From IMG/VR virus record IMGVR_UViG_3300033984_000473, positions 62,001 through 126,000 of that record: 64,000 bases of DNA, one strand, 5' to 3'. The first letter of the stretch is position 1. Each line of letters opens with the position of its first letter. The notes beneath the pieces are model-generated. The model was not told where the DNA came from. It was given only the letters and a program-made list of their open reading frames with translations, and searched no databases. Shown one piece after another: positions 3,310-62,056 of the stretch. Both the position numbers and the translations under genes were made by a program.

Positions 3310-3855
3310 TTAATCTATAACTTTGTACGTTTCACCATTTAGCGTTAATTTACGAACGTTTTTAAGGTATAATTTACGCCAAGTGATTTCACGTTCCGTA
3401 CCTTGATTTGTTGCGTGATTTTCAGTAGGTAAAAAATCAACAAGTTTCTTTTTGTCGGTAATTTTACCATTTGCAACAAATTTTGTACGAGGTTTTACAT
3501 TATCATTAGGACGGTATTGTAAAACAAATTCATTTTTGTACGTTCCAATAAATTGGTTATTTTCGCCAAATTCCAATACCATTGTATTTTGCCCTTGCTT
3601 GTAGTCGCTTGTATCTTTATCTTCTTTTACCAATTGATTTTCAACGGCTAAAATGTAGTTGCTATTTAAAAGAATACCTACTTTTGACAATTTAACAACA
3701 TTTTCAAAGTTGTTTTTTATTGTTTTGTCGGTACGGCTTTTTACCAACATTTTAGGACTTGATTTTTGTAATACACTTGCAAATACATTAACGTTTGCAA
3801 CAACTTTAGTGTTTAATAAAATTTGTGCTAATTCTTTTTGTGATACTTTTTTCAT
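3310..3855 (-). CDS. hypothetical phage protein
   Basis: 181-aa ORF with own promoter and terminator hairpin (AAAATAAGCCC..GGGCTTAT). Confidence 0.75.
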   Translation of the reverse strand: MKKVSQKELAQILLNTKVVANVNVFASVLQKSSPKMLVKSRTDKTIKNNFENVVKLSKVGILLNSNYILAVENQLVKEDKDTSDYKQGQNTMVLEFGENNQFIGTYKNEFVLQYRPNDNVKPRTKFVANGKITDKKKLVDFLPTENHATNQGTEREITWRKLYLKNVRKLTLNGETYKVID

Positions 3856-4157
3856 TTTGTGTGATTTTTAATTGGTTACTTATTTTGAACACTGCAAATA
3901 ACGTGAATAGTTTTGATATACGCAAGTTTTTAAGCAATTATTTTTAATATTTTTTTAAAATTTATTGTTACTAATAGTAAAACGCTGATTATCAACACGT
4001 TATCATAAATGGTCAATAAAGCAATAGAAGCAATTACGAAATTTGTAAGATTTTTCATTTTGTGTGATTTTTAATTGGTTATTAATATGGTGCAAATGTA
4101 AAACAAACTTTTTTAATATCCTAGTGTTTTTTATTTTTTTTTTAATTATTTTTTGTT

Positions 4158-4228
4158 TATCTTTGTAGTGTACAAAATGAGATACGGGTCACGGCAAGTG
4201 AGAGAGTAGACTCCGTCACGCCTATATG
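4158..4228 (+). ncRNA. AGTAGACTCC-family element, copy 1
   Basis: TATCTTTG promoter; ACGGG-TCAC(GGCAA)GTGA-GAGAGTAGACTCC-GTCACGCCTATATG. Confidence 0.6.
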
Positions 4229-4322
4229 TTACCCAGTAAAAAATTAACATAATATTAACATTTAAAATTTGGTAGTATGGTTTAAATGTCTTATATTTGC
4301 CCTATCAATTAAAACACACATT

Positions 4323-4598
4323 ATGACACAATTTGAACAAGCACAAGAGCAAGTAAAGAATGGAGAATTGAGAACGCCTAATGTTTCGGCTGGGGCAAAG
4401 ACTGTTGACTATTTTGGTTATCAGTTATCTGTTCACAAATTCAATTTATCGTTGATGGCAAAGGGAATGTCTTTCAAGGGTATTACGTTTACACAGATTA
4501 AAAAGTATTACGGATTGAAAGGTAGAAGTGCGAAAGATTGCCTACCGCAATTCCTTGAGATTGTCGAGAAATACAAACAAGAACTAAACCCTCAATAG
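4323..4598 (+). CDS. hypothetical protein
   Basis: Promoter 4268-4299, AAAACACACA leader, ATG at 4323, terminator AAACCCTC..GAGGGTTT-T run. Confidence 0.8.
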   Translation: MTQFEQAQEQVKNGELRTPNVSAGAKTVDYFGYQLSVHKFNLSLMAKGMSFKGITFTQIKKYYGLKGRSAKDCLPQFLEIVEKYKQELNPQ

Positions 4599-5145: not shown

Positions 5146-5595
5146 TTAAACTTTTTTGAATATCAAAAGTCTTGCACTATCAAATACGTTTGAACATTTA
5201 CCGCATGAACTTGCTTTTTTTGGCGTTTTGAATTTTCTATGAACGTGTGAACATTTAGGACAAACCGCTTCAAGTGTACCCTTAACAATGATTGTGTTAT
5301 TTTCGGTATAACAACGATTTCCATCACAACCGATTGACAATGCTTTACGTTTCCACGTGCTATCGTGTCCGTGTCCGTGTCCAACCAATGCGTGAGCAAT
5401 TTCGTGTAGTATTGTATTTTTTACTCTTGCTTCGTCATTCAATAGTATCAAATGTTTTGATAAGCTGATACGTCTGTAAGTGTAGTTGCAACAGCCAAAT
5501 CTACGCTTTGCGTTATCTAAATTAAACATCCAATTATCAAGTCCGTGTTCTTTCATTAATTTTTCCCCTAATTCACTTGCTTTAACTAATTCCAT
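5146..5595 (-). CDS. SprT-like zinc metalloprotease
   Basis: HEIAHAL (HExxH), GHGHDSTWK, C-terminal CxxC pairs. Confidence 0.9.
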   Translation of the reverse strand: MELVKASELGEKLMKEHGLDNWMFNLDNAKRRFGCCNYTYRRISLSKHLILLNDEARVKNTILHEIAHALVGHGHGHDSTWKRKALSIGCDGNRCYTENNTIIVKGTLEAVCPKCSHVHRKFKTPKKASSCGKCSNVFDSARLLIFKKV

Positions 5596-5689
5596 AATTT
5601 GTGTTTTTAATTGGTTACTTATTCAACACTACAAATATAATGATAATAATCCACACTACCAAATATAATGTGGATTATTTTCAATTATT

Positions 5690-6797: not shown

Positions 6798-7061
6798 TTA
6801 GTCAACTATTCCTATCAATAATTTGTCTGTGTAACGTCTACCTTTATTCAAGTCGTGTGCTATTCCGACAAGTACGCCATACAACGTATCTTTTATAGGC
6901 AAATCGGGATAGTCCATTTGTAACATTTCGATTGTGGTTTCTGCAACGTACTTGCACGTATCTTTATTTCCATAACCCCAATTCTCGCAATACCCAACCC
7001 TACGAATAAGGTCTGCATAAGATATAGGATAATAACCATTTTGAATTTTTGACTTTGCCAT
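6798..7061 (-). CDS. hypothetical protein
   Basis: Own promoter. Confidence 0.75.
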   Translation of the reverse strand: MAKSKIQNGYYPISYADLIRRVGYCENWGYGNKDTCKYVAETTIEMLQMDYPDLPIKDTLYGVLVGIAHDLNKGRRYTDKLLIGIVD

Positions 7062-7140
7062 AGTGTGTTTTGATTAGAGTACAAATATAGGTAAAAAAAA
7101 ATAACCTACCAAATATTTGATAGGTTATTTTTAATTTATT

Positions 7141-7428
7141 TTATTCTTCCCAAAACATTATCGTTCCAGCATCGTTCCATTCTGCCCACCAGCCGTGTTT
7201 TCTCAATAGCTTCATAAACTCGTTGTGAACTCCGAACTCGTATTTTGTGTAGTTTTCGGTGTAGTAACTGAATAGGTGCAACCCATCTTTTGCTTCGTCT
7301 CCGTTCTCTCCAGAACTCCAAATTCCGCCTTTAGAACCATTGAACTCCTCGGTTGTTCTCATAAACAAATTTGGATACTTTGCTTCGATTGCTTTCATCA
7401 TTGCTTTTCTTGTACTTGCCATAATCAT
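7141..7428 (-). CDS. hypothetical protein
   Basis: Own promoter. Confidence 0.8.
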   Translation of the reverse strand: MIMASTRKAMMKAIEAKYPNLFMRTTEEFNGSKGGIWSSGENGDEAKDGLHLFSYYTENYTKYEFGVHNEFMKLLRKHGWWAEWNDAGTIMFWEE

Positions 7429-7519
7429 AGTGTATTGGTGGTTGCTTCATTGCAACAGTACAAATATAGGTATAATAATCCACACTACCAAATGTAATGT
7501 GAATTATTTTCAATTATTT

Positions 7520-7702
7520 TTAAACTTTTTTTCGTAGTTTCAAATCTTTGATTACCTTTGCAACCATATCTTGCACTTCAAACTCGCTTTGATTATCAGT
7601 ATCGGTGCAATCGGGAACGTACCCCAATTCGATTAGTTTGTTGGTAATTGTGATACCAATTTCTTGTCGTTCATCTCGGTCTAACTTTCTTGTCTTAGCC
7701 AT
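7520..7702 (-). CDS. hypothetical protein
   Basis: Own promoter. Confidence 0.75.
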   Translation of the reverse strand: MAKTRKLDRDERQEIGITITNKLIELGYVPDCTDTDNQSEFEVQDMVAKVIKDLKLRKKV

Positions 7703-7777
7703 TGTGTATGTTTTAATTGATTAGAGTACAAAGATAAGGATAAGTTTTCACTTATCCAAATCTTTTACCAATTATTT

Positions 7778-25014: not shown

Positions 25015-25896
25015 TTAAACCATTTCCAATACGCCACTTTTTCTAGCAACGAACTCCAAAGATTTTTGGTTCATTTTGTAACCACTACCCAACATAATCG
25101 TTTCCAGTTTACCGTTTTCACGTTTCGGTGCAGATAATTCGTGTGTAGTGAATTTCGTAATACCACTATGCAAACCCCAAAGGTTAAGCCCTTTGTCATT
25201 AAATTCGCCCTCAATACAGTTGTACAACGTTTCCATTTTGTTAATGCTACGTGTACTCTTTTCCGACAATTCCTTTATACTTGTCAATTCCTTGTCAAAC
25301 CCTAACAAATACTTAACCATTTCGTCAGCCAATTCTCTAGTACAATCCCTGTCAGCCAGTACGTTATATAGCTCAATTTGTTTAAGGCTACGGTTCAATG
25401 CAGTTTCAATCAAAAATGGAATTTCTTTGATACGGTGTTCAATACTAGCCGAGTGTCTAAATTTCGCTTCGCCTTGCTTATAGAACTTGAAAAACTGATT
25501 AGAACAGCTCATAGTAAAATCCCCAATACCAATAGACAATGAAGTACTACCGTCATTACTATCCAGTACTGTAATGAATTTTTTAATCCTGTCATGCCCT
25601 ACAACGCCATCGCCAGTAATACCTAACTGTAAAAATACCTTGCGACCCTCATTCATAGAACCAGCTTTGGTTACAATCAAATCGTTACCAAACGGTCTAA
25701 TGCCTTGAAGCACCATATCAACGATTTCGTGGTTCTGTGATACTGTATAACCGTCCTTAACAGTATTGATACACTTGCCTAACTTGTCATTGAATAAACC
25801 AAAGTAACCACTAGGATTAAGGTTAGAATCAAATAACGGTCTTTTGCTAATGTTGAAGTCTAAACCGTTCGCTACTAAAATGTCTTGTGTGTTCAT
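25015..25896 (-). CDS. DUF932 (DUF945/TIGR03299-like) protein
   Basis: YTVSQN, AGSMNEGRKVFLQL, DSNDGSTS, CSNQF, HSASI, NLWGL pattern typical of the family. Confidence 0.85.
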   Translation of the reverse strand: MNTQDILVANGLDFNISKRPLFDSNLNPSGYFGLFNDKLGKCINTVKDGYTVSQNHEIVDMVLQGIRPFGNDLIVTKAGSMNEGRKVFLQLGITGDGVVGHDRIKKFITVLDSNDGSTSLSIGIGDFTMSCSNQFFKFYKQGEAKFRHSASIEHRIKEIPFLIETALNRSLKQIELYNVLADRDCTRELADEMVKYLLGFDKELTSIKELSEKSTRSINKMETLYNCIEGEFNDKGLNLWGLHSGITKFTTHELSAPKRENGKLETIMLGSGYKMNQKSLEFVARKSGVLEMV

Positions 25897-26204: not shown

Positions 26205-27023
26205 TTATACCAATTCCAATTCCTTGGTAGGAACGCTATCATAAATAGCGTTAACCTTATCAAAAATAGCTTGGCTATCTTTGGCTGTTTCAATTACAAA
26301 ACCACTTGTAAAAGCAATTTTATTATCAGCACCTTTGCCTGTCATTTTTTTGTATTTTAAACCACAAATAACATTCTGTTTATCCAAAAATCGTAGGTCG
26401 TCATTATCAGCATTGATAACCTCAAAACCGTTATAAGTAGTAGGTAATTTGTCAAATACCATTGCTACATTAAAACCACGTTTCAATAATTCTAATGATT
26501 TAATATCATTCGTTTCAGAACGTGAAAAAGTCAAATGATAATTACTAGGTAACACTTTGTCAAAACGAAAATGATTTTTTGTATAATCATAAAATTGTAC
26601 ATTCGGGTACATTTCAAAAATGTTTTTAGTATTATTGTCAAATACTTTGTATTTTTCAAATGGCAAATCACTTGTACCATTTAAACGTATAGTAACAATA
26701 GCTTTGTCAGTATGTTTTTTTACCGCTTTGCCAATTTCCACATATAATTGGTTCATAAATTCAATACGACTACTTAAAAAGTATTCAGTTTTGGCAACCC
26801 TACCTTGCATAACATTACTATACATACCGCCAAAACCACTACCAACAAGGCAACTATCAGCACAACCTTTACTTGCATGGCTACATACATTGATACCTTT
26901 GCTATTGGCTGTAAAAGGCGACATATACATTATATAGGTCATATAACCTAATTTTTCTCCTTTTACTGTTTTCGCATTATTAGTACTTAATAATGGTTTT
27001 CTTTTTACTACTTCTACATTCAT
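26205..27023 (-). CDS. GP88-like phage protein
   Basis: NVCSHASKGCADSCL Cys cluster, IRLNGTSD, FYDYTK, YHLTFS, DLRFLD. Confidence 0.8.
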   Translation of the reverse strand: MNVEVVKRKPLLSTNNAKTVKGEKLGYMTYIMYMSPFTANSKGINVCSHASKGCADSCLVGSGFGGMYSNVMQGRVAKTEYFLSSRIEFMNQLYVEIGKAVKKHTDKAIVTIRLNGTSDLPFEKYKVFDNNTKNIFEMYPNVQFYDYTKNHFRFDKVLPSNYHLTFSRSETNDIKSLELLKRGFNVAMVFDKLPTTYNGFEVINADNDDLRFLDKQNVICGLKYKKMTGKGADNKIAFTSGFVIETAKDSQAIFDKVNAIYDSVPTKELELV

Positions 27024-30442: not shown

Positions 30443-30720
30443 TTGATTTGTTTTAATTTACAACCTCTAAATGTTTTCTGTCCTTTGATATATGGGAATA
30501 GGTTATAGAAGTTTCTCCATACCTTATCGGAACGTTTCAATGATGGCACTCTAACAGATATTTGACCGTAACCACCATCACCACTTTTGACATTGTAGGC
30601 TTTTTGGTTATCTCTGGTAACTTGCTTTGGCATATAGTTATAGTCTGGTCTTCCATTCCATCTAAGTCCCCAGTGTCCGTTATAGGATTTGACTAGTCTG
30701 TATATTGGTTTTTCTTCCAT
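30439..30720 (-). CDS. hypothetical protein
   Basis: Operon context. Confidence 0.7.
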   Translation of the reverse strand: MEEKPIYRLVKSYNGHWGLRWNGRPDYNYMPKQVTRDNQKAYNVKSGDGGYGQISVRVPSLKRSDKVWRNFYNLFPYIKGQKTFRGCKLKQIK

Positions 30721-31469
30721 TAGTATCTTTCGTTAAATCGTTTAAGGATATCTAGTAGATAAGGGTCTAGTTTACTTTCTACGTAGTCTATATCTGCTTG
30801 TGTTAGGTCTTGAAGGTGATAGTTTAGTAGTTCACCAACTATTGATGCGTTTGTATCGGTATCACCGCCACAGCTAACAACGTTTTTGATAGCATCTTGG
30901 GTGTTCTTATCTGAATGATAGATAAATGCACTTTTACAGAATCTAAAAGTATCTTTGGCTTTCACTTCAAACTTTTTAAATGGAAATAATTTAAACTTAA
31001 TAAAGTAGTCATACTCCTTAACGTTTGCATAGTACAGTTCAGCCAGTTCCAACGAATATACAATGCTTTCAGCGTTCACGTGTGATGTTAGGCAAGATTC
31101 AGCGATAAGTTCTTTGGTTGTTAACAAAGCATTTGATAGATACATAAACGGTGCTATTCTCATAAGACAGCCGTTACCCCAAGATTTATTAATGGTACCC
31201 ATTGGTGAGTTAAGCCATTCTTTGAAGTCTTTCCCATAGTGGTCGCCTTGGTATCTCATACCAACTTCTTTGTATGCTTCCTCGAATGATTGGTTATCTA
31301 GGATTGCTTTGGCAGTTGCCAGTGTCATTAGCGTATCATCGCTAAATACTGAATCTGGGTTATGTAGGTTGATTGTATCTTCTGGTGGGAAGTTTGCCAT
31401 AATGGGAAACTCGTAGGGTTGTCCTACGAGGTCACCAAGTATTGCTCCGTATAGTTTATCTTTTTTCAT
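30720..31469 (-). CDS. ADP-ribosylglycohydrolase (DraG/ARH family)
   Basis: GAILGDLVG, FSDDT, GNGCLMR, GGDTDTNASI. Confidence 0.9.
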   Translation of the reverse strand: MKKDKLYGAILGDLVGQPYEFPIMANFPPEDTINLHNPDSVFSDDTLMTLATAKAILDNQSFEEAYKEVGMRYQGDHYGKDFKEWLNSPMGTINKSWGNGCLMRIAPFMYLSNALLTTKELIAESCLTSHVNAESIVYSLELAELYYANVKEYDYFIKFKLFPFKKFEVKAKDTFRFCKSAFIYHSDKNTQDAIKNVVSCGGDTDTNASIVGELLNYHLQDLTQADIDYVESKLDPYLLDILKRFNERY

Positions 31470-31519
31470 AGTACAAAGGTACATATAATATTTCATATAT
31501 GCAAATTTAATATTAGAAA

Positions 31520-34368: not shown

Positions 34369-34404
34369 AGTACAAAGGTATGTAAAGTTTTTGGAATATC
34401 CTAA

Positions 34405-56387: not shown

Positions 56388-57271
56388 TAGTTCATCTCAT
56401 TGTATGCTAAATTTACTCTAGCATTTTGTCTTAATTTCTTAAGTGATTTTTCTTTGATTTGACGAGCCATCTCACGTGTGATGCCAACTTCATCACCAAT
56501 CTCTTTCAAGGTCATTGGTATCGCCCCATTCAACCCAAACAACGCTTCCATTACACGTTTATCTCTTGGTTTCAATATATCTAGACTAGCCGCAATCTCT
56601 GATTGGACATCTTGTTGATATAATAAATGGTCAGTAGCCTTATATGTTGAATCATCAGAGATTAAATCTGATAACATAGACCCAGAACCACCATCATCAG
56701 TTCCAATAGTACGGTCCATTGAGTCCATGTTGTATGTATTCAAGACATCCAAGAACATAAAGTCCTCACTAGATATCTCGTTTCCAAACTCACTTATCAC
56801 TTCGTTGATGTCAACACTACGACCAGCTTTTTGTTCCAATTCTTGGATGTACTTATCCAACTTAGACAAGTTATTAACCTTGTTTGCTGGAATACGAACC
56901 AACTTACCATATTTGGTAATGTGTTCCATAATGATTTTTCTAACCCACCATACAGCATATGAAATGAATTTGTAGCCCATGTCTGGTGTGAACTTTTCAG
57001 CCGCCAATACCAACCCAATGTTACCTTCGTTAACCAAGTCTTCCAAGTGAACATTTTCTGTAGCATATTGCTTAGCAACCGATACTACGAAACGTAGATT
57101 TCTACGTACCAATTCATCGATAGCCTTTCTATCGCCTTTACTAGCCTTTTCAGTACATATCTTTTCTTCTTCTGGTGTGAACATAGGAATACATGAAATG
57201 TCTTTCAAATACTGTTTAAACGATTCATTTTCCGTGTTCGTGTACTTCTGTGCAATTTTAAATTGTCTCAT
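56387..57271 (-). CDS. RNA polymerase sigma factor, RpoD/SigA family (short Bacteroidota type)
   Basis: YLKDI (1.2), NLRFVVSVAKQY, DLVNEGNIGL, KFISYAVWWVR, MTLKEIG..TREMARQIKEKSLKKLR. Confidence 0.95.
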   Translation of the reverse strand: MRQFKIAQKYTNTENESFKQYLKDISCIPMFTPEEEKICTEKASKGDRKAIDELVRRNLRFVVSVAKQYATENVHLEDLVNEGNIGLVLAAEKFTPDMGYKFISYAVWWVRKIIMEHITKYGKLVRIPANKVNNLSKLDKYIQELEQKAGRSVDINEVISEFGNEISSEDFMFLDVLNTYNMDSMDRTIGTDDGGSGSMLSDLISDDSTYKATDHLLYQQDVQSEIAASLDILKPRDKRVMEALFGLNGAIPMTLKEIGDEVGITREMARQIKEKSLKKLRQNARVNLAYNEMN

Positions 57272-57339
57272 AAAAAATTTTGGGGTTTAGTTGTTTATTG
57301 TTAAGTGCAAAGGTAGGAATAATATTACATATATCCTAA

Positions 57340-57783
57340 TTAATCTAAGTTTCTTTCAACTTCTCTTTTTAAGTCTTTCTCTTTCAAACTGTTGCGTTTG
57401 TCGTATAGGTGCTTACCTTTGGCAAGACCAATTTCCACTTTAATGAATCCAGTGTTCGATAGTATAATCTCTAAAGGTACAATAGTCAAGCCTTTTTGTG
57501 AAATACTTTCACGTAATTTGATTATTTCTTTCTTCTTCATAAGAAGTTTTCTATCCCTTAGTGGTTGATGGTTATAGTATTTACCACCTTCTTTGTGTTC
57601 AGTTACGTGCATTCCTTTGATGAAGATTTCATCATTGGTAATAAAACAATAGGCTTCTACTATAGAAACCTTGCTTGATTTTATTGATTTAACCTCGGAA
57701 CCTTGTAATTGAATACCAGCTATGTGCTTTTCGAGTATAATGTATTCAAAATATGCTCGTTTGTTTTTAGTTATTGATTTCAT
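57340..57783 (-). CDS. smpB: SsrA-binding protein SmpB
   Basis: NKRAYFEY, AGIQLQGSEVKS, RKLLMKKKEI, GLTIVPL, LAKGKHLYDKR. Confidence 0.95.
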   Translation of the reverse strand: MKSITKNKRAYFEYIILEKHIAGIQLQGSEVKSIKSSKVSIVEAYCFITNDEIFIKGMHVTEHKEGGKYYNHQPLRDRKLLMKKKEIIKLRESISQKGLTIVPLEIILSNTGFIKVEIGLAKGKHLYDKRNSLKEKDLKREVERNLD

Positions 57784-57815
57784 TGTACAAAGGTACGATT
57801 AAATTAGTTAATATC

Positions 57816-58511
57816 CTAGAGTTTTTTCGCTATCGGTATGTTTTTTTCTATTACTAGATACTCACCACTAGTACCTATGGTATCTATAGCAATGATTTTA
57901 TCAGTGATTACTATGTTTTCTTGTGTAGTATGCCCTATTACATATGTAATATCATCAATAGTATCAGCAAATAGCGATGGAATACGTACCCATATAGGTG
58001 ATTGGGTAACATCGTTACCTGTTTGACTCATATTTGGACCGTATGCAAAGCAAAATGAGTCTAAATCAGTAGTAAATTTATCATTTATTTCCTTTTCTAG
58101 GTCATTTGTTTTGATTCCATTGCGTAAACACCATGTTTTTGTTACTCCAGCATGTGTAAAAACATATTTATCATGTTGAAAACACATTTGGACTAGTCCA
58201 GAATCTATTGCTGGTTGTAAAACTGTGTTAATATCTAATGCTCTGTATGTATTATGACCAGAATATTTCTCTCCAGCACCTTTTAAATAGTGAAAATCAT
58301 GGTTACCAAGAAGTAAAACTACTTGTTCCATGTTATTTTTCTTAAATTCTAAGATTTTTGTGAAGTTTTCTATCTGTTGGTCAGTAGTAATATCATAATG
58401 AGTATCAAAATAGTCACCTATGAAGATAATTTTATCAGCATCCTTATTTTTTTTCACGATTTCTTCCCATAATACACGACCATGTGTATCACCTAGTGCT
58501 ACTATCTTCAT
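57816..58511 (-). CDS. calcineurin-like metallophosphoesterase
   Basis: GDTHG, GDYFD, GNHD, THAG, GHT. Confidence 0.9.
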   Translation of the reverse strand: MKIVALGDTHGRVLWEEIVKKNKDADKIIFIGDYFDTHYDITTDQQIENFTKILEFKKNNMEQVVLLLGNHDFHYLKGAGEKYSGHNTYRALDINTVLQPAIDSGLVQMCFQHDKYVFTHAGVTKTWCLRNGIKTNDLEKEINDKFTTDLDSFCFAYGPNMSQTGNDVTQSPIWVRIPSLFADTIDDITYVIGHTTQENIVITDKIIAIDTIGTSGEYLVIEKNIPIAKKL

Positions 58512-58528
58512 ATTCTATTCTTTTTATG

Positions 58529-58627
58529 TACATAGCGAGGGAATCGAACCCCCATCTCCGCAAGCGATTGGTACTGCATCTCACGATGTGCTCCCATTTC
58601 GGCACTCTACCACTGAGCTAGCTACAT
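58529..58627 (-). tRNA. tRNA-like RNA with extended anticodon arm (99 nt), G3-U70
   Basis: D-arm GCTCAGTGGTAGAGT; T-arm GGGGG-TTCGATT-CCCTC; no 7-nt anticodon loop. Confidence 0.55.
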
Positions 58628-58735
58628 ATTCGGTTATACTATATGGTGGTCTATCACCTTAGCCTTTCGCTAAAACTGTTAATGTGTGCCTCACTGGACT
58701 ACTCAACCAATGTCGCTTTAATAGTATAACCTAGA

Positions 58736-58804
58736 AACTCATACTGGATTCGAACCAGTGTCTGCGGGCTCCACGCCCCCCGTGGTTCCACTCCACTAAT
58801 GAAT
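58736..58804 (-). tRNA. atypical short tRNA (anticodon possibly TGG, uncertain)
   Basis: D stem GTGG/CCAC; T-arm ACTGG-TTCGAAT-CCAGT; irregular anticodon arm. Confidence 0.5.
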
Positions 58805-58902
58805 CAACTATCACCATGTCGCTCGGCAAAGCTAAACGTAATAGAAAGGATTATAACCGTCTGAAAGTTTGCCGACCTTCATGTTGCTATTCCCCAATTT
58901 TG

Positions 58903-59001
58903 TGCGAGAGGGTGGATTCGAACCACCGACACCTAGTCCCTAGTTGTTCCCTTGTACTTTGGGCTAAAGACCTTAGCGTTTACCAACTTCGCCACTCTCG
59001 C
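58903..59001 (-). tRNA. tRNA-Leu(TAG)-like with insertion in the anticodon loop (99 nt)
   Basis: Perfect acceptor GCGAGAG/CTCTCGC, Leu-type D-arm, TT-TAG followed by extra hairpin CCC..GGG. Confidence 0.65.
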
Positions 59002-59114
59002 AGTTTCTAGTCTTTCCCAGTGTCAACCATTGCAGTATGAAGAGTGCACATCGTCATTGCCAATTACCATAGTTTGTATACAGTGACCATAGGGCTTAAC
59101 CGTTGGATTTCTTG

Positions 59115-59188
59115 TGGAAGTAACGGGACTCTAACCCGTGTTCTCGCAGCTACAGCCGCTTTATACTATACTATTGTACTATACTCCC
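59115..59188 (-). tRNA. atypical tRNA (GTA in shortened loop; G3-U70 acceptor)
   Basis: GGGAGTA/TACTTCC-A; T-loop TTAGAGT is non-canonical. Confidence 0.5.
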
Positions 59189-59420
59189 ATTTGATTACTA
59201 CCAGCAACGAGTAACATATATCCGAATCATTAGCATCACGGAGCGTCTTTCTTTGTTACCCTACTCTCGGTGTCGCTAACGCCTCATGTCAAGTAGTAAT
59301 CTTCGTCTTTCCGAATTGTCAAGATATTTTCAGACACATTGTCCAAGACTGCTTCTCAATCAGCTAAGCACCTTATACGTCAGAGGATTACGCTTAGATT
59401 TACCTCTCGAACAGGCTTCG

Positions 59421-59624
59421 TGGTTAGAACAGGAATCGAACCTGTGTGTAATTATAGTCGCTTAGTCGACACCATTTGACTGGGACATAAGGTTTTATTA
59501 TTATTACGACTTTTATTGGGTTGATGAATGTTACACCTGTTTACACGACTTGTCCACTAACTCATCTCATCGGCAACCCATTACTTAACCTTGTTAATTA
59601 GCAATTCCATTCTGCCATCTAACC
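59421..59624 (-). ncRNA. 204-nt tRNA-like RNA with about 150-nt structured insert
   Basis: GGTTAGA/TCTAACC-A, D-arm GCAGAATGGAATTGC, T-arm ACAGG-TTCGATT-CCTGT; internal stems AAGGTT/AACCTT, TGGGTTG/CAACCCA. Confidence 0.65.
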
Positions 59625-59813
59625 ATTTGGGTGCTACCTTTAGCATCGGTCAACACACCCTCATGTTATTTTTGTTTCTGTATTAGGCTAGGAAACTCCT
59701 TTCTTTGGAAATAAGCCGTACTTTAATATGGTTTAACTTTTAACACCTCTATTTTGCAACCAGTTTCATAACTATCCAAACTGTTCTCCATAGTGGAGTA
59801 CCAAAGCGACTTG

Positions 59814-59864
59814 TGGTAAGGATGGGACTCGAACCCACAATCTCTGGCTTATGACCACCAGCGA
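59814..59864 (-). pseudogene. orphan 3' half of a tRNA-Met(CAT)-like gene
   Basis: CTGGT-GGTCATAA-GCCAG, T-arm GTGGG-TTCGAGT-CCCAT, CCTTACC-A; matching 5' strand not found. Confidence 0.5.
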
Positions 59865-60128
59865 ATACTTTTCTTTCTAATGCTAGGAACCTTGTTATCG
59901 GGTTACGTACCCCTCAAATTAAAAACTAAAATTTCAAACAAAAGAACTTCCAATCATTCTTCCTTACGAACGGTTTTGTTTAAGAACTTTTCCTCATAGC
60001 ACCATGACAATTCATGGGTATTAAAACCGCCAAACTGGGGGTTAGCTATAAGTAAAAGCCATGTGATTAATTAGGACACCATTTCTGGGATATCATTCTA
60101 CTTTCTTTCAACCACATATTTAACTTAG

Positions 60129-60294
60129 TAGATAAGGCAAGATTTGAACTTGCACCGCCAAGCTAGCCACGCTCGGATTGAGTGTTTAACGAGCTATCCC
60201 CAATTGCTCCAAGCCGTTATGTGTCTACTAATTTAAGATTCTCCCAGAACCACCACTTCTAATGAAGTCAGCTTAGCTTTTCCACCACTTATCT
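60129..60294 (-). ncRNA. 166-nt tRNA-like RNA lacking a D stem, long insert
   Basis: AGATAAG/CTTATCT-A, helix GCTAAGC/GCTTGGC, T-arm GCAAG-TTCAAAT-CTTGC. Confidence 0.6.
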
Positions 60295-60629
60295 AATTCT
60301 TGTCACCTATACAAATCGGTGAGTAGCGTACATGCACGAGAATGGAAGCATCTGCTCATCTCTTTAGGAACTTGTACTCCCTACTATTTACGGCATAGTT
60401 GCCAGTGCTACCTCTTAATTAACATACGTCATTTGTATTTGACTAATAGTGGATAGACATACCAAGTCTAATTGGTTTTGATTACACTCTCAGCCGCTAA
60501 GCTTTGTGTCACTTGCCAGACCTTACTGGCATTATTAGTGGTCCCACTATCTGTTAACCTCGAACAAAAAAAATCATCATGTGCAGAATCCCACTGCAAG
60601 TGCCAGTTCATAAACTGACTAAATTAGCG

Positions 60630-60723
60630 TGGAGAAGAGAGGATTCGAACCTCTACAAGCCGCTAAGCTATCAGCCATGACCTTCCTTGGGACTCGAACC
60701 CAACTTCCATCCAAAGCTTCTCC
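60630..60723 (-). ncRNA. 94-nt tRNA-like RNA with two T-arms
   Basis: GGAGAAG/CTTCTCC-A enclosing TTGGG-TTCGAGT-CCCAA and AGAGG-TTCGAAT-CCTCT. Confidence 0.6.
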
Positions 60724-60951
60724 AGTAATTACACATCCATCAAGATTGGGATTCCGAAGTAAGTAACTTAATCCTACCAGTTAATCATACTCAACAACCA
60801 TATTACTTCTTGTAGTAAACGCAATTTCTATACTAGCTTGCACAAAATCTAGTTATTTAACGTGCTTTATAGAATCTACTTGTTTGTCTTTCTATGCGTA
60901 ATTATAATACAAAGGTACTACCTTTTTATTTGATATGCAAGTTTTTTGCAA

Positions 60952-61803
60952 TTAATTTCTATTCAAAAGAATATTTGATGAAGAACCGAATACGTTGTTT
61001 GAACCGTATGGTGATTTACCCTTTTCTGCCCAAATTCTTTCAGTTTCTGCTCTATATAATTCTAACAACTTAGGTTGTGATAAAATCTCTTTCGTTTTAG
61101 CATCGTAGATAGCCGCTTCATAGTTACCTTTAGCCAAAGCTACTTTCTTCAAAGCTGTTTGTTCTGCTTGTACAGTTTGTGATTTAATCGTAGCCGTTTC
61201 TTGCAATACCGCAATCTTTCTTTCAATCGCTTGTTTATAAGATGGTGGCAATGCCATTTTCAAGATAGCAATATTGGTCAAGGTGAAACCTTCTTTCTCC
61301 AAAGATGCTGATAATGTTTTAGTTACATTTGCTTCATAAACATTTCTATGTTGTAATAAGCTATCAGATGCAAACATAGTAGCGTTGTCTAATAATTCTT
61401 TTCTAACAATTGTTCTAACTCTCGTATTAATTAAATCTTCCATCCCAACTCTATACTTGATGAATAAATCAGATGCTTTTGCTCTCTGTAATTGTAAGTT
61501 AACCGCTACATCTAATCCGAATGTTGCTCCATCTGCTGATGTTACATCAATATGTTCATCTGTTGGTGAATCTTCATCTACTGCTGATGTCCAAACCTTG
61601 TGTTGAACTGATGTTGGATACATAAACACGTCTTGTGTTGGTGGGAAATAAAAGATAAAACCAGAAGCCATTTCAATATTCGGAACCCCTTTGTCATTCC
61701 CAATCTGGTCAACGACCAATGCAACTTCTGCTGAGTCTGCTGTTGTACACGATGTAACACTCATTAATAATACCAACGATAATAATCCTAATAGTTTTTT
61801 CAT
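60952..61803 (-). CDS. SPFH/prohibitin (band 7) family lipoprotein
   Basis: Lipobox-like VTSC; TSADGATFGLDV, VRTIVR, coiled-coil AIERK..AEQ. Confidence 0.9.
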   Translation of the reverse strand: MKKLLGLLSLVLLMSVTSCTTADSAEVALVVDQIGNDKGVPNIEMASGFIFYFPPTQDVFMYPTSVQHKVWTSAVDEDSPTDEHIDVTSADGATFGLDVAVNLQLQRAKASDLFIKYRVGMEDLINTRVRTIVRKELLDNATMFASDSLLQHRNVYEANVTKTLSASLEKEGFTLTNIAILKMALPPSYKQAIERKIAVLQETATIKSQTVQAEQTALKKVALAKGNYEAAIYDAKTKEILSQPKLLELYRAETERIWAEKGKSPYGSNNVFGSSSNILLNRN

Positions 61804-62011: not shown

Positions 62012-62056
62012 ATTGTTTGTTTTTATTATAATACAAAGGTACAACCTTTTTTTTTA

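What the first reader, a model, noticed from the sequence alone, without database searches (positions are those of the whole stretch)
57340..60723. Cluster of tRNA-like RNAs that keep acceptor and T arms but lack a normal anticodon arm, next to phage smpB
Seen: eight minus-strand elements between 58529 and 60723 have T-arms and (seven of eight) paired acceptor stems with an A discriminator, but none is a fully canonical cloverleaf. The anticodon arm is expanded (99, 99, 166, 204 nt), irregular, or accompanied by a second T-arm. Established: SmpB binds the tRNA-like domain of tmRNA and substitutes for its missing anticodon arm; host anticodon nucleases (PrrC/RloC type) cut anticodon loops. smpB lies within about 750 bp downstream. 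Inference: a set of aminoacylatable or decoy tRNA mimics working with SmpB (ribosome rescue or translational takeover) or resisting or titrating anticodon nucleases. Retained perfect acceptor stems and internal long-range pairing argue against simple decay.
Basis: partly seen in the sequence, partly recalled or inferred. Interest (0 to 1): 0.85.

Follow-up and report, generated by a model that had tools for sequence, protein, structure and literature searches.

The report
Phage operon of remodelled tRNA-shaped RNAs
A large phage of Bacteroidota carries a promoter-driven, conserved 2.4-kb block of eight tRNA-derived RNAs with rebuilt or irregular decoding ends, mixed with other folded RNAs; they are real genes, their role is unknown, and no link to the neighbouring smpB shows up in relatives.

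Summary
Eight minus-strand elements (58529-60723) each have a T arm and a 6-7-bp acceptor stem. Only one (E2) is called by default ARAGORN, and none has a regular 7-nt anticodon loop with U33. smpB is intact 746 nt downstream.

The elements are not decaying genes. Relatives keep six of them, with compensatory changes in the acceptor, D and T stems. All have U at -1 and C after the discriminator. A Bacteroidota-type phage promoter sits upstream.

It also holds a 277-nt multi-junction RNA (X1) and two structured spacers.

In E1, E3, E5 and E7 the anticodon branch is a longer, conserved helix that pairs with or replaces the former anticodon. In E4 it is a short tetraloop hairpin. E2, E6 and E8 keep irregular anticodon loops.

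I read the block as an operon of tRNA-scaffolded, mostly non-decoding RNAs matured by tRNA enzymes.

The SmpB partnership is not supported. Most smpB-bearing relatives have no cluster nearby, no tmRNA-like features are conserved, and alanine identity occurs only in E4.

The serious rival is that the inserts are short introns in working phage tRNA genes (Leu-UAG, Leu-UAA, Met-CAU). That fits codon usage but has no known bacterial mechanism.

The parts
60908..60947 (-). Bacteroidota-type promoter (-33 TTG-like element and -7 TAccTTTG) in front of the RNA block
   Evidence: TAnnTTTGTA occurs 66 times on the minus strand. Each copy has TTTG/TTAG about 20 nt upstream and an ORF start 2 or about 22-25 nt downstream. 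This copy is one of only three with no ORF behind it. No further copy occurs until 57795.
60630..60723 (-). E8: class-II, Ser-like tRNA-derived RNA. The D arm is reduced to an 11-13-nt loop. The anticodon arm looks like a T arm (loop UUCGAGU, CGA). The variable arm is long.
   Evidence: Rfam tRNA 25.8 bits, below the gathering score. Homologues in L011, L043 and L029 have CGA or GGA at the anticodon. It is 100% identical in strain L050.
60296..60572 (-). X1: about 277-nt multi-junction structured RNA that is not tRNA-like. Its 3' closing strand ends 1 nt before the 5' end of E7.
   Evidence: Five-sequence alignment A11; RNAalifold gives 89 pairs, 15 of them with compensatory changes. No Rfam family matches at E<=10.
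60129..60294 (-). E7: 166-nt tRNA-derived RNA with an acceptor stem, a T arm, a class-II-like 5' part and a large conserved middle. It has a cryptic UAA.
   Evidence: 82-83% identical in L011, L012 and L029, with compensatory changes in the acceptor and T stems.
59814..59968 (-). E6: initiator-like tRNA-derived RNA (CAU anticodon, mismatch at 1-72) with a structured insert of about 76 nt between the D arm and the anticodon arm. It has G33, or an 8-nt loop.
   Evidence: Alignment A9; 8 of 36 pairs are compensatory, including pairs inside the insert. C1xC72 in the window and L011, C1xA72 in L029.
59421..59624 (-). E5: 204-nt tRNA-derived RNA with a long rod-like middle
   Evidence: A perfect 7-bp acceptor stem. 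The L029 homologue (5403-5601) has a compensatory G2-C71 to A-U change.
59115..59188 (-). E4: 74-nt tRNA-like RNA with G3.U70 and A73 (alanine identity). Its anticodon arm is a 5-bp stem capped by a tetraloop (6-nt loop in ARAGORN).
   Evidence: Rfam tRNA 40 bits and the fold. It is found only in the window and strain L050, so there is no comparative test.
58903..59001 (-). E3: tRNA-Leu(UAG)-derived RNA with a 23-nt insert whose CUA pairs with the anticodon, giving a 9-bp helix plus a CCC/GGG extension
   Evidence: Rfam tRNA 42.4 bits. Its first 26 nt and acceptor stem nearly equal a bacterial tRNA-Leu(UAG). In L040, two G.U pairs of the long helix become A-U.
58806..58902 (-). S32: structured spacer forming a 22-nt-arm hairpin
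   Evidence: Inverted repeat I1. It is 38-40 of 40 identical to L011 and L043, more conserved than E2. L040 lacks exactly S32 plus E2.
58735..58805 (-). E2: near-canonical 71-nt tRNA with G33, a G.G mismatch in the anticodon stem, U73 and a fast-changing anticodon
   Evidence: ARAGORN Pro-UGG. The anticodon is UUG in L050 (the single difference in 72 nt) and in L012, and UUU in L011.
58628..58734 (-). S21: structured spacer closed by an 11-bp stem
   Evidence: Inverted repeat I3, 100% complementary. One pair of the closing stem reads C-G, U.G and U-A in different relatives.
58529..58627 (-). E1: class-I tRNA frame with an invariant 28-nt insert after position 37, containing a CAUC-GNRA-GAUG hairpin and AGUACCAAUCGC
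   Evidence: Rfam tRNA 41.5 bits. Seven homologues exist, including one on an unrelated viral contig (L017). Covariation is seen in the acceptor, D and T stems; the insert never varies except in the tetraloop.
57816..58511 (-). Calcineurin-like metallophosphoesterase, probably co-transcribed with the RNA block
   Evidence: Pfam Metallophos 5.7e-12, and the PHROG family NinI-like phosphatase. No promoter motif lies between 60908 and 57795.
57340..57783 (-). smpB, with its own promoter motif at 57786-57795
   Evidence: Pfam SmpB 1.5e-52. It aligns to solved SmpB structures through the C-terminal tail.

Best explanation
The gene-free stretch 60947-58528 (minus strand) is one promoter-driven operon of structured RNAs in a jumbo phage that infects Bacteroidota. 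It holds eight tRNA-derived genes and at least three other folded RNAs (X1, S32, S21).

Every tRNA-derived unit keeps what the tRNA maturation enzymes read: U at -1, an acceptor stem, a T arm, and an unpaired discriminator followed by C. The precursor is therefore most likely cut by RNase P and a 3' tRNase into stable tRNA-shaped RNAs. The same cuts would free the RNAs that lie between them (inferred).

In E1, E3, E5 and E7 the anticodon branch has been rebuilt into a longer, conserved helix in which the old anticodon is paired or absent. In E4 it is a short stem capped by a tetraloop. As they stand, these five cannot read codons (shown at the level of sequence and structure). E2, E6 and E8 keep an irregular anticodon loop and may still decode.

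The most likely working principle (inferred) has two parts. The tRNA top half serves as a handle for processing, stability, CCA addition and perhaps charging by synthetases that ignore the anticodon (Leu, Ala, Ser frames). The rebuilt branch is the specific effector part.

smpB is a neighbour among early, translation-related genes. It is not a demonstrated partner.
For: Promoter and host.
- Of 66 phage promoters of Bacteroidota type, one faces the block and has no ORF behind it.
- A T9SS sorting-domain protein in relative L043 points to a Bacteroidota host.

Maturation signals.
- All nine tRNA-like units in the window have T at -1 and C after the discriminator.

Structural conservation.
- Compensatory changes keep the acceptor, D and T stems: E1, E6, E7 and E5.
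- E1's rebuilt arm is the most conserved part of E1. It recurs unchanged on an unrelated viral contig inside different acceptor and T stems.
- E3's long helix is improved in L040, where two G.U pairs become A-U.

Scaffold pattern.
- Paralogues in L013 (98, 124, 77 and 102 nt), E3 and the 15-kb locus share one Leu-like frame with different middles.

Other RNAs in the block.
- X1 and the spacers are structured and conserved. X1's 3' end abuts E7's 5' end.
- Between strains, E4, E5, E7 and E8 are 100% identical while the leader and the E7-E6 spacer are scrambled by indels.
Against: - There are no expression, end-mapping or charging data.
- E3, E7 and E6 become plausible tRNAs (Leu-UAG, Leu-UAA, Met-CAU) if the inserts are removed.
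- Those anticodons fit the phage's abundant A/U-ending codons, which is what real phage tRNAs look like.
- No target or binding partner of the rebuilt arms was found.
- The comparative set is small (4-7 sequences per element, a narrow clade). E4 has no comparative support at all.
Confidence: 0.5

Rival explanations
1. These are working phage tRNA genes interrupted by short intervening sequences. A phage or host nuclease plus an RNA ligase removes the inserts, giving ordinary tRNAs (Leu-UAG, Leu-UAA, fMet/Met-CAU and a GGG-type).
For: - ARAGORN places the E1 and E3 inserts at position 37/38 and leaves 7-nt loops with U33.
- E3's frame equals a bacterial tRNA-Leu(UAG), and removal of 23 nt gives the loop UUUAGGG.
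- The inserts pair with the anticodon, as pre-tRNA introns do.
- The cryptic anticodons UAA, UAG and CAU, and E2's UUG/UUU/UGG, match abundant phage codons: UUA 30.7, CAA 24.1, AAA 67.5 and AUA 21.5 per thousand.
- E6 has the initiator-type mismatch at 1-72.
Against: - There is no bulge-helix-bulge motif. E3's predicted 3' junction lies inside a continuous 9-bp helix (by inspection).
- Inserts of 23-135 nt are too short for group I introns, and Rfam gives no intron hit.
- No splicing endonuclease, RNA ligase, kinase or CCA enzyme was found among about 100 window ORFs.
- E1's insert is more conserved than its exons, while its 'anticodon' varies (GGG, GAG, CUGG) on one frame.
- Insert positions differ between elements: the loop, position 26/27, and whole-branch replacement.
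- ARAGORN's intron position is partly imposed by its model.
Confidence: 0.25
2. These are SmpB-dependent tRNA mimics. One or more elements act like the tRNA-like domain of tmRNA. They would either enter stalled ribosomes with the phage SmpB or titrate SmpB, as proposed for a TLD-only molecule.
For: - An intact phage smpB lies 746 nt downstream.
- E4 has G3.U70 and A73 and no usable anticodon.
- E8 lacks a D stem.
- There is a precedent: mycobacteriophage DS6A carries a TLD-only tmRNA, and such a molecule inhibits tmRNA, perhaps by titrating SmpB (PMC4131195).
Against: - Most phages of the same SmpB clade have no cluster near smpB.
- smpB has its own promoter.
- No element is called tmRNA, and there is no tag reading frame.
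- E4 occurs only in two near-identical strains. Like most of the elements it keeps a D stem, and all keep an anticodon-side helix where SmpB would sit.
- E1's G3.U70 is not conserved.
Confidence: 0.07
3. This is counter-defence against tRNA-targeting host nucleases. E2, E6, E8 and the 15-kb tRNA would be replacement tRNAs with altered anticodon loops that escape anticodon nucleases. The non-decoding ones would be decoys for enzymes that attack tRNA ends or bodies.
For: - E2's anticodon switches among UUG, UUU and UGG on one frame. This includes a single-base difference between 99%-identical strains.
- From my own knowledge, Gln-UUG and Lys-UUU are classic anticodon-nuclease targets.
- The loops are irregular: G33, and 6- or 8-nt loops.
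- The acceptor ends are fully conserved.
Against: - No defence or anti-defence gene context was found in the window.
- Decoys for anticodon nucleases should keep the anticodon loop, and these do not.
- The invariant rebuilt arms are not explained.
- This idea overlaps with the best explanation rather than excluding it.
Confidence: 0.13
4. These are decaying tRNA pseudogenes, the remnants of a former phage tRNA island with no present function.
For: Irregular loops, mismatches (G.G in E2, C.C in E6 and E7) and patchy presence among relatives.
Against: - Compensatory substitutions in stems.
- 100% identity of E4, E5, E7 and E8 between strains whose flanking spacers are scrambled.
- Uniform U-1 and C74.
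- A consensus promoter upstream.
- An invariant insert shared with an unrelated contig.
Confidence: 0.03

Closest known systems
Polycistrons of irregular tRNAs and allo-tRNA-like RNAs from metagenomes and metatranscriptomes (Mukai et al. 2017, PMC5389517)
   Same: Arrays of tRNA-shaped genes with extra loops or stems and possible five-stem junctions. Their anticodons do not fit their frames. Some are charged but not used in translation, and their function is unknown.
   Different: Those have 8/4 or 9/3 acceptor/T geometry, were attributed to Acidobacteria and lie near toxin-antitoxin genes. Here the geometry is 7/5, the carrier is a Bacteroidota phage, and the anticodon branch is replaced by conserved long helices.
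GOLLD and ROOL large ornate RNAs of phages and prophages, found next to tRNA islands (Rfam; bioRxiv 10.1101/2024.12.08.627333; PMC5737381)
   Same: Phage-borne, highly structured RNAs of unknown function sitting beside or around tRNA genes, probably co-transcribed. GOLLD can carry tRNAs in its linker.
   Different: Rfam finds no GOLLD or ROOL match here or in relatives at E<=10 or E<=1. X1 is only about 277 nt, and here the tRNA-like parts themselves are remodelled.
TLD-only tmRNA of mycobacteriophage DS6A, and tmRNA/SmpB pairs of huge phages (PMC4131195, PMC7162821)
   Same: Phage-encoded tRNA-like RNA without a decoding end, and phage-encoded SmpB.
   Different: No element here has the conserved alanine identity pair, a D-stem-less TLD joined to a P2 helix, or a tag frame. 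The cluster and smpB are not co-inherited.
Stable RNAs 'species 1 and 2' in the phage T4 tRNA cluster (from my own knowledge, not checked here)
   Same: Non-tRNA stable RNAs encoded inside a phage tRNA operon, matured with the tRNAs, with function still unknown.
   Different: No sequence or model was available to compare. T4's neighbouring tRNAs are canonical.
Intron-containing pre-tRNAs of archaea and eukaryotes, and group I introns in bacterial tRNA-Leu(UAA) and tRNA-fMet genes
   Same: Inserts at or near position 37/38 that pair with the anticodon. The affected identities (Leu-UAA, Met-CAU) recall the bacterial group I cases.
   Different: There is no bulge-helix-bulge motif, the inserts are far shorter than any group I intron, and no splicing enzyme gene was seen in the window.

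Membership tests
Canonical tRNA (Rfam RF00005) | Score at or above the Rfam gathering threshold (29 bits) | tested here: inconclusive
   E1 scores 41.5, E3 42.4, E4 40.0 and E2 40.4 bits, but E1 and E3 reach this only by skipping 39-41 nt as a local insert. E8 scores 25.8 and E6 17.1, both below threshold. E5 and E7 give no tRNA hit.
Canonical tRNA (Rfam RF00005) | 5-bp anticodon stem with a 7-nt loop carrying U33 | tested here: not met
   E2 has G33 and a G.G mismatch. E4 has a 6-nt loop or tetraloop. E6 has G33 or an 8-nt loop. E1, E3, E5 and E7 have expanded arms. E8's candidate loop has U33, but its D stem is missing.
Canonical tRNA (Rfam RF00005) | Acceptor stem and T arm maintained by selection | tested here: met
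   Compensatory changes are seen in E1, E5, E6 and E7.
tmRNA or tmRNA tRNA-like domain (SmpB ligand) | Detection by ARAGORN or Rfam tmRNA models | tested here: not met
   There is no tmRNA call at default settings. The Rfam tmRNA hits of 10.7 and 7.8 bits fall far below the gathering score of 47. Permuted-tmRNA calls appear only at an 80% threshold.
tmRNA or tmRNA tRNA-like domain (SmpB ligand) | G3.U70 with A73 (alanine identity), conserved | tested here: not met
   It is present in E4 only, and only in two near-identical strains. In E1 it occurs in the window but is A3-U70 in L050, L011 and L012.
tmRNA or tmRNA tRNA-like domain (SmpB ligand) | Tag reading frame ending in a hydrophobic tail before tandem stops | tested here: not met
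   No tmRNA-like tag was found in any of the three frames of the block.
tmRNA or tmRNA tRNA-like domain (SmpB ligand) | Physical binding to SmpB | not testable with these tools
   This needs a gel shift or pull-down.
Protein-spliced tRNA intron (archaeal/eukaryal type) | Bulge-helix-bulge motif at the exon-intron junctions | tested here: not met
   By inspection of the folds, E3's junctions lie at the end of and inside a continuous 9-bp helix. E1 has a 5-nt/9-nt internal loop on the wrong strands.
Protein-spliced tRNA intron (archaeal/eukaryal type) | Splicing endonuclease and ligase available | tested here: inconclusive
   None was found among about 100 window ORFs. The other 170 kb of the phage and the host genome were not examined.
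Group I intron in a tRNA gene | Group I core recognised by Rfam, and a length of about 200 nt or more | tested here: not met
   No intron family matches at E<=10. The inserts are 23, 28, about 60-76 and 135 nt.
GOLLD / ROOL | Match to the Rfam covariance models | tested here: not met
   There is no hit in window 57000-61500 at E<=10 or in L029, L043 and L013 at E<=1.
Bacterial Y RNA-like (YrlA) tRNA mimics | Rfam match, with the tRNA-like module closed by a loop and a Ro-binding stem at the termini | tested here: not met
   There is no Rfam hit. Here the acceptor stems are open-ended like tRNA. No TROVE/Ro protein was found among the window ORFs.

The most novel reading that the evidence does not exclude
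The inserts are deliberate anticodon masks. The phage would encode pro-tRNAs (Leu-UAG, Leu-UAA, Met-CAU and others) whose anticodon is locked in a conserved helix. They would become decoders only after a sequence-specific cut-and-rejoin step. That would be a tRNA splicing or activation pathway in a bacterial virus, perhaps involving the co-encoded ornate RNA X1 or an unidentified phage enzyme.
Probability: 0.15. Interest if true: 0.9.

Novelty: new variant of a known kind. Interest (0 to 1): 0.62.

Why it matters
Phage tRNA islands are usually read as codon-supply kits. Here a conserved, promoter-driven island contains no regular tRNA. Every unit keeps the maturation handle of a tRNA and changes the decoding end, and the units are interleaved with other conserved folded RNAs.

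If the rebuilt arms are effectors, this is a natural tRNA-scaffold design for stable small RNAs in a bacterial virus. If the inserts are removed, it is a tRNA splicing route not known in bacteria.

Either outcome is directly testable with small-RNA sequencing of one infected culture or of the source lake metatranscriptomes. The locus also yields several RNA families with no Rfam match (the E1 arm, E7 and X1) and a clean set of Bacteroidota-type phage promoters.

Tried and rejected
- A blastn of the whole locus against 50,697 phage genomes found no match.
- Genome-collection scans for the E1 arm in bacteria failed. The first pattern was mistyped with an extra N and found nothing. Presence in bacteria therefore remains unknown.
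- Exact or degenerate motifs of E1, E3, E7 and X1 occur only on 3-4 IMG/VR contigs.
- I read E5 as a mini-tmRNA because of conserved tandem UAA triplets. I rejected this because there is no G3.U70 and the frame encodes only 1-2 codons (by inspection).
- I compared E3's loop with the sarcin-ricin loop (AGUAC...GGAAC) and X1 with RNase P conserved regions. These are resemblances from memory only, with no model support, so I dropped them.
- Single-sequence folding energies were mostly not better than shuffles. The structural claims rest on covariation instead.
- The sigma-70 consensus promoter and terminator scan gave nothing above chance. The real promoters are of Bacteroidota type.
- Other isolated T-arm pattern matches in the window (21353, 45242) are AT-rich chance hits.
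- I saw no sign of stop-codon recoding.

Full report
**Source and setting**

The window is part of IMG/VR contig IMGVR_UViG_3300033984_000473 (232,931 bp), a jumbo phage with 33.5% G+C.

Nearly all genes lie on the minus strand. Sixty-six of them are preceded by TAnnTTTGTA, with TTTG/TTAG about 20 nt further upstream and an ORF start 2 or about 22-25 nt downstream. From my own knowledge, this is the -33/-7 promoter type of Bacteroidota. A relative also encodes a protein with a T9SS sorting domain. The host is therefore very probably a member of Bacteroidota. I saw no sign of stop-codon recoding.

**The observation**

On the minus strand the order is:
- SPFH/Band7 gene (61803-60952)
- 2.4 kb without ORFs longer than 64 aa
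- a calcineurin-like phosphoesterase (58511-57816)
- smpB (57783-57340)
- a sigma-70 factor (57271-56387)

Default ARAGORN calls only E2. Rfam tRNA passes its threshold for E1, E3 and E4, and for E2 in E-value mode.

T arms are strongly enriched: 9 in 2.2 kb against 7 in the remaining 61.8 kb of the same strand. SmpB is complete, including its C-terminal tail.

**Are the elements real genes?**

Six further independent loci carry homologues: L050 (a 99% strain), L011, L012/L043, L029, L040 and a diverged L013.

- E1 (seven sequences): 97.4% of cells pair and 9 of 28 pairs change on both sides. None of 500 shuffles, and no slid control, comes close.
- E6: 8 of 36 pairs are compensatory. E7: 5 of 49. 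In both this includes acceptor and T stems.
- E5: its acceptor stem changes G2-C71 to A-U in L029.
- Between the window and strain L050, E4, E5, E7 and E8 are identical, while the leader and the E7-E6 spacer are scrambled by indels.
- All nine tRNA-like units of the window have T at -1 and C right after the discriminator. From my own knowledge, U-1 is the base that bacterial RNase P prefers.
- One of the 66 promoters (60947-60908) faces the block and is one of only three with no ORF behind it. The next promoter is the one in front of smpB.

These are therefore selected and very probably transcribed, and they are built to be matured like tRNAs. Simple decay is excluded for practical purposes.

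**Anatomy of each element**

- E2 is a near-normal 71-nt tRNA, but it has G33, a G.G mismatch and U73. Its anticodon is UGG here, UUG in the 99% strain (the only difference in 72 nt) and in L012, and UUU in L011.
- E4 has G3.U70 and A73. Its anticodon arm is a 5-bp stem with a tetraloop. It exists only in two near-identical strains.
- E1 is a class-I frame with a 28-nt insert after position 37. The insert (a CAUC-GNRA-GAUG hairpin followed by AGUACCAAUCGC) and the flanking CCG/CGG never vary, while the three 'anticodon' bases do (GGG, GAG, CUGG). The same arm sits in different acceptor and T stems on an unrelated 43% G+C viral contig, L017.
- E3's first 26 nt and its acceptor stem nearly equal a bacterial tRNA-Leu(UAG). 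A 23-nt insert supplies a CUA that pairs with the UAG, giving a 9-bp helix. In L040 two of its G.U pairs become A-U.
- E7 (166 nt) and E5 (204 nt) keep a class-II-like 5' part with large conserved middles.
- E6 has a D arm, a structured 76-nt insert, and then an anticodon arm with a conserved CAU. It also has a mismatch at 1-72 (C.C, or C.A in L029), as in initiator tRNA.
- E8 has a Ser-type anticodon (CGA, or GGA in L029) in a loop that looks like a T loop, a long variable arm and no D stem.
- L013's four paralogues (98, 124, 77 and 102 nt), E3 and a second locus at 15003-14874 share one Leu-like frame with different middles.

**More than tRNA-like genes**

The stretches between the elements are not junk.
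- Spacer S32 (58902-58806) is 38-40 of 40 identical to L011 and L043, more conserved than E2. It folds into a 22-nt-arm hairpin.
- S21 is closed by a perfect 11-bp stem, one pair of which reads C-G, U.G and U-A in different relatives.
- L040 lacks exactly the module S32 plus E2.
- Between E8 and E7 lies X1 (60572-60296), a multi-junction RNA with 89 predicted pairs, 15 of them compensatory. Its closing helix ends one base before E7's 5' end.
- Rfam knows none of these RNAs.

**The SmpB idea**

Among about 35 loci of the phage SmpB clade with at least 3 kb upstream (several come from the same contigs), only four lineages have a dense cluster. L013 has a small one and the truncated L040 keeps two elements. 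All others have 0-3 scattered T arms.
- smpB has its own promoter.
- No tmRNA is found in the window or beside any phage smpB, whereas bacterial homologues at 41-51% identity often have ssrA next to smpB.
- Alanine identity is confined to E4.
- There is no tag frame.

Co-location is real. Co-function is not supported, though binding cannot be tested here.

**The intron question**

Removing the inserts gives plausible anticodon loops for E1 and E3. The cryptic anticodons (UAG, UAA, CAU, and E2's UUG/UUU/UGG) match the phage's most used A/U-ending codons.

Several points count against splicing:
- There is no bulge-helix-bulge motif.
- The inserts are too short for group I introns, and Rfam gives no intron hit.
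- Pfam finds no endonuclease, ligase, kinase or CCA enzyme among about 100 window ORFs.
- E1's insert is more conserved than its stems.
- Insertion sites differ from element to element.

I keep splicing as the main rival at about 0.25.

**Conclusion**

The finding is a conserved operon of tRNA-scaffolded RNAs plus other structured RNAs in a Bacteroidota jumbo phage. How they mature is inferred from sequence signals. What they do is not known.

The nearest described things are:
- the irregular tRNA polycistrons of Mukai et al.
- the GOLLD/ROOL-with-tRNA arrangement
- the TLD-only tmRNA of phage DS6A

The locus is a member of none of them.

Noticed in passing
window, 66 minus-strand sites, e.g. 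57786-57795, 34371-34380, 62032-62041: A phage-wide promoter motif, TAnnTTTGTA with TTTG/TTAG about 20 nt upstream, which is the Bacteroidota -33/-7 type. ORF starts lie either 2 nt or about 22-25 nt downstream, so many transcripts would be leaderless or nearly so.
   Followed up: partly
window 15237-14874 (minus strand): A second promoter-driven odd-tRNA locus. It has a tRNA at 15149-15076 with a 6-nt anticodon loop (UUCAUC, CAU; Rfam 48.2 bits). It also has a Leu-like element of about 130 nt (15003-14874) that shares E3's D arm, with two acceptor mismatches.
   Followed up: partly
window 4694-4685 (minus strand): A third promoter copy with no ORF of 40 or more codons behind it. It may drive another non-coding RNA.
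   Followed up: no
L017:375-575 (IMGVR_UViG_3300010338_000614): An unrelated 43% G+C viral contig carries two adjacent expanded tRNA-likes. One has E1's exact arm. The other has a 27-nt anticodon loop containing a GCA-GUAA-UGC hairpin.
   Followed up: partly
L029:2015-2665 and 7001-7705; L043:317-967 and 3770-4465: In two relatives the RNA cluster is bracketed by two calcineurin-like phosphoesterase genes. In the window only the downstream one is present.
   Followed up: no
L043:10583-13741: A 1052-aa protein with DUF4874, DUF4832 and a T9SS C-terminal sorting domain on a phage contig. It is a host marker for Bacteroidota.
   Followed up: no
L043:6620-7570 and L043:6407-6481: A T5orf172 (GIY-YIG-like) nuclease gene sits next to a canonical tRNA-Ile(AAU) between the cluster and smpB. 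This suggests that mobile-element traffic reshapes the region.
   Followed up: no
L010:10896-10930, L004:10904-10937: Rfam DUF805b RNA motif hits (39.2 and 35.8 bits) about 4.5 kb downstream of smpB in two relatives.
   Followed up: no
window 58583-58570, 58951-58945, 60378-60372: A shared AGUAC motif occurs in exposed parts of E1's insert, E3's terminal loop and an X1 hairpin loop. It could be a common protein site or loop-loop contact, or it could be chance.
   Followed up: no
window 30720-31496, 26205-27023, 25015-25896: Neighbouring early genes include an ADP-ribosylglycohydrolase, a GP88-family protein and a DUF932 protein. A SprT-like protein, an HNH endonuclease and a glucosaminidase lie elsewhere in the window.
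   Followed up: no
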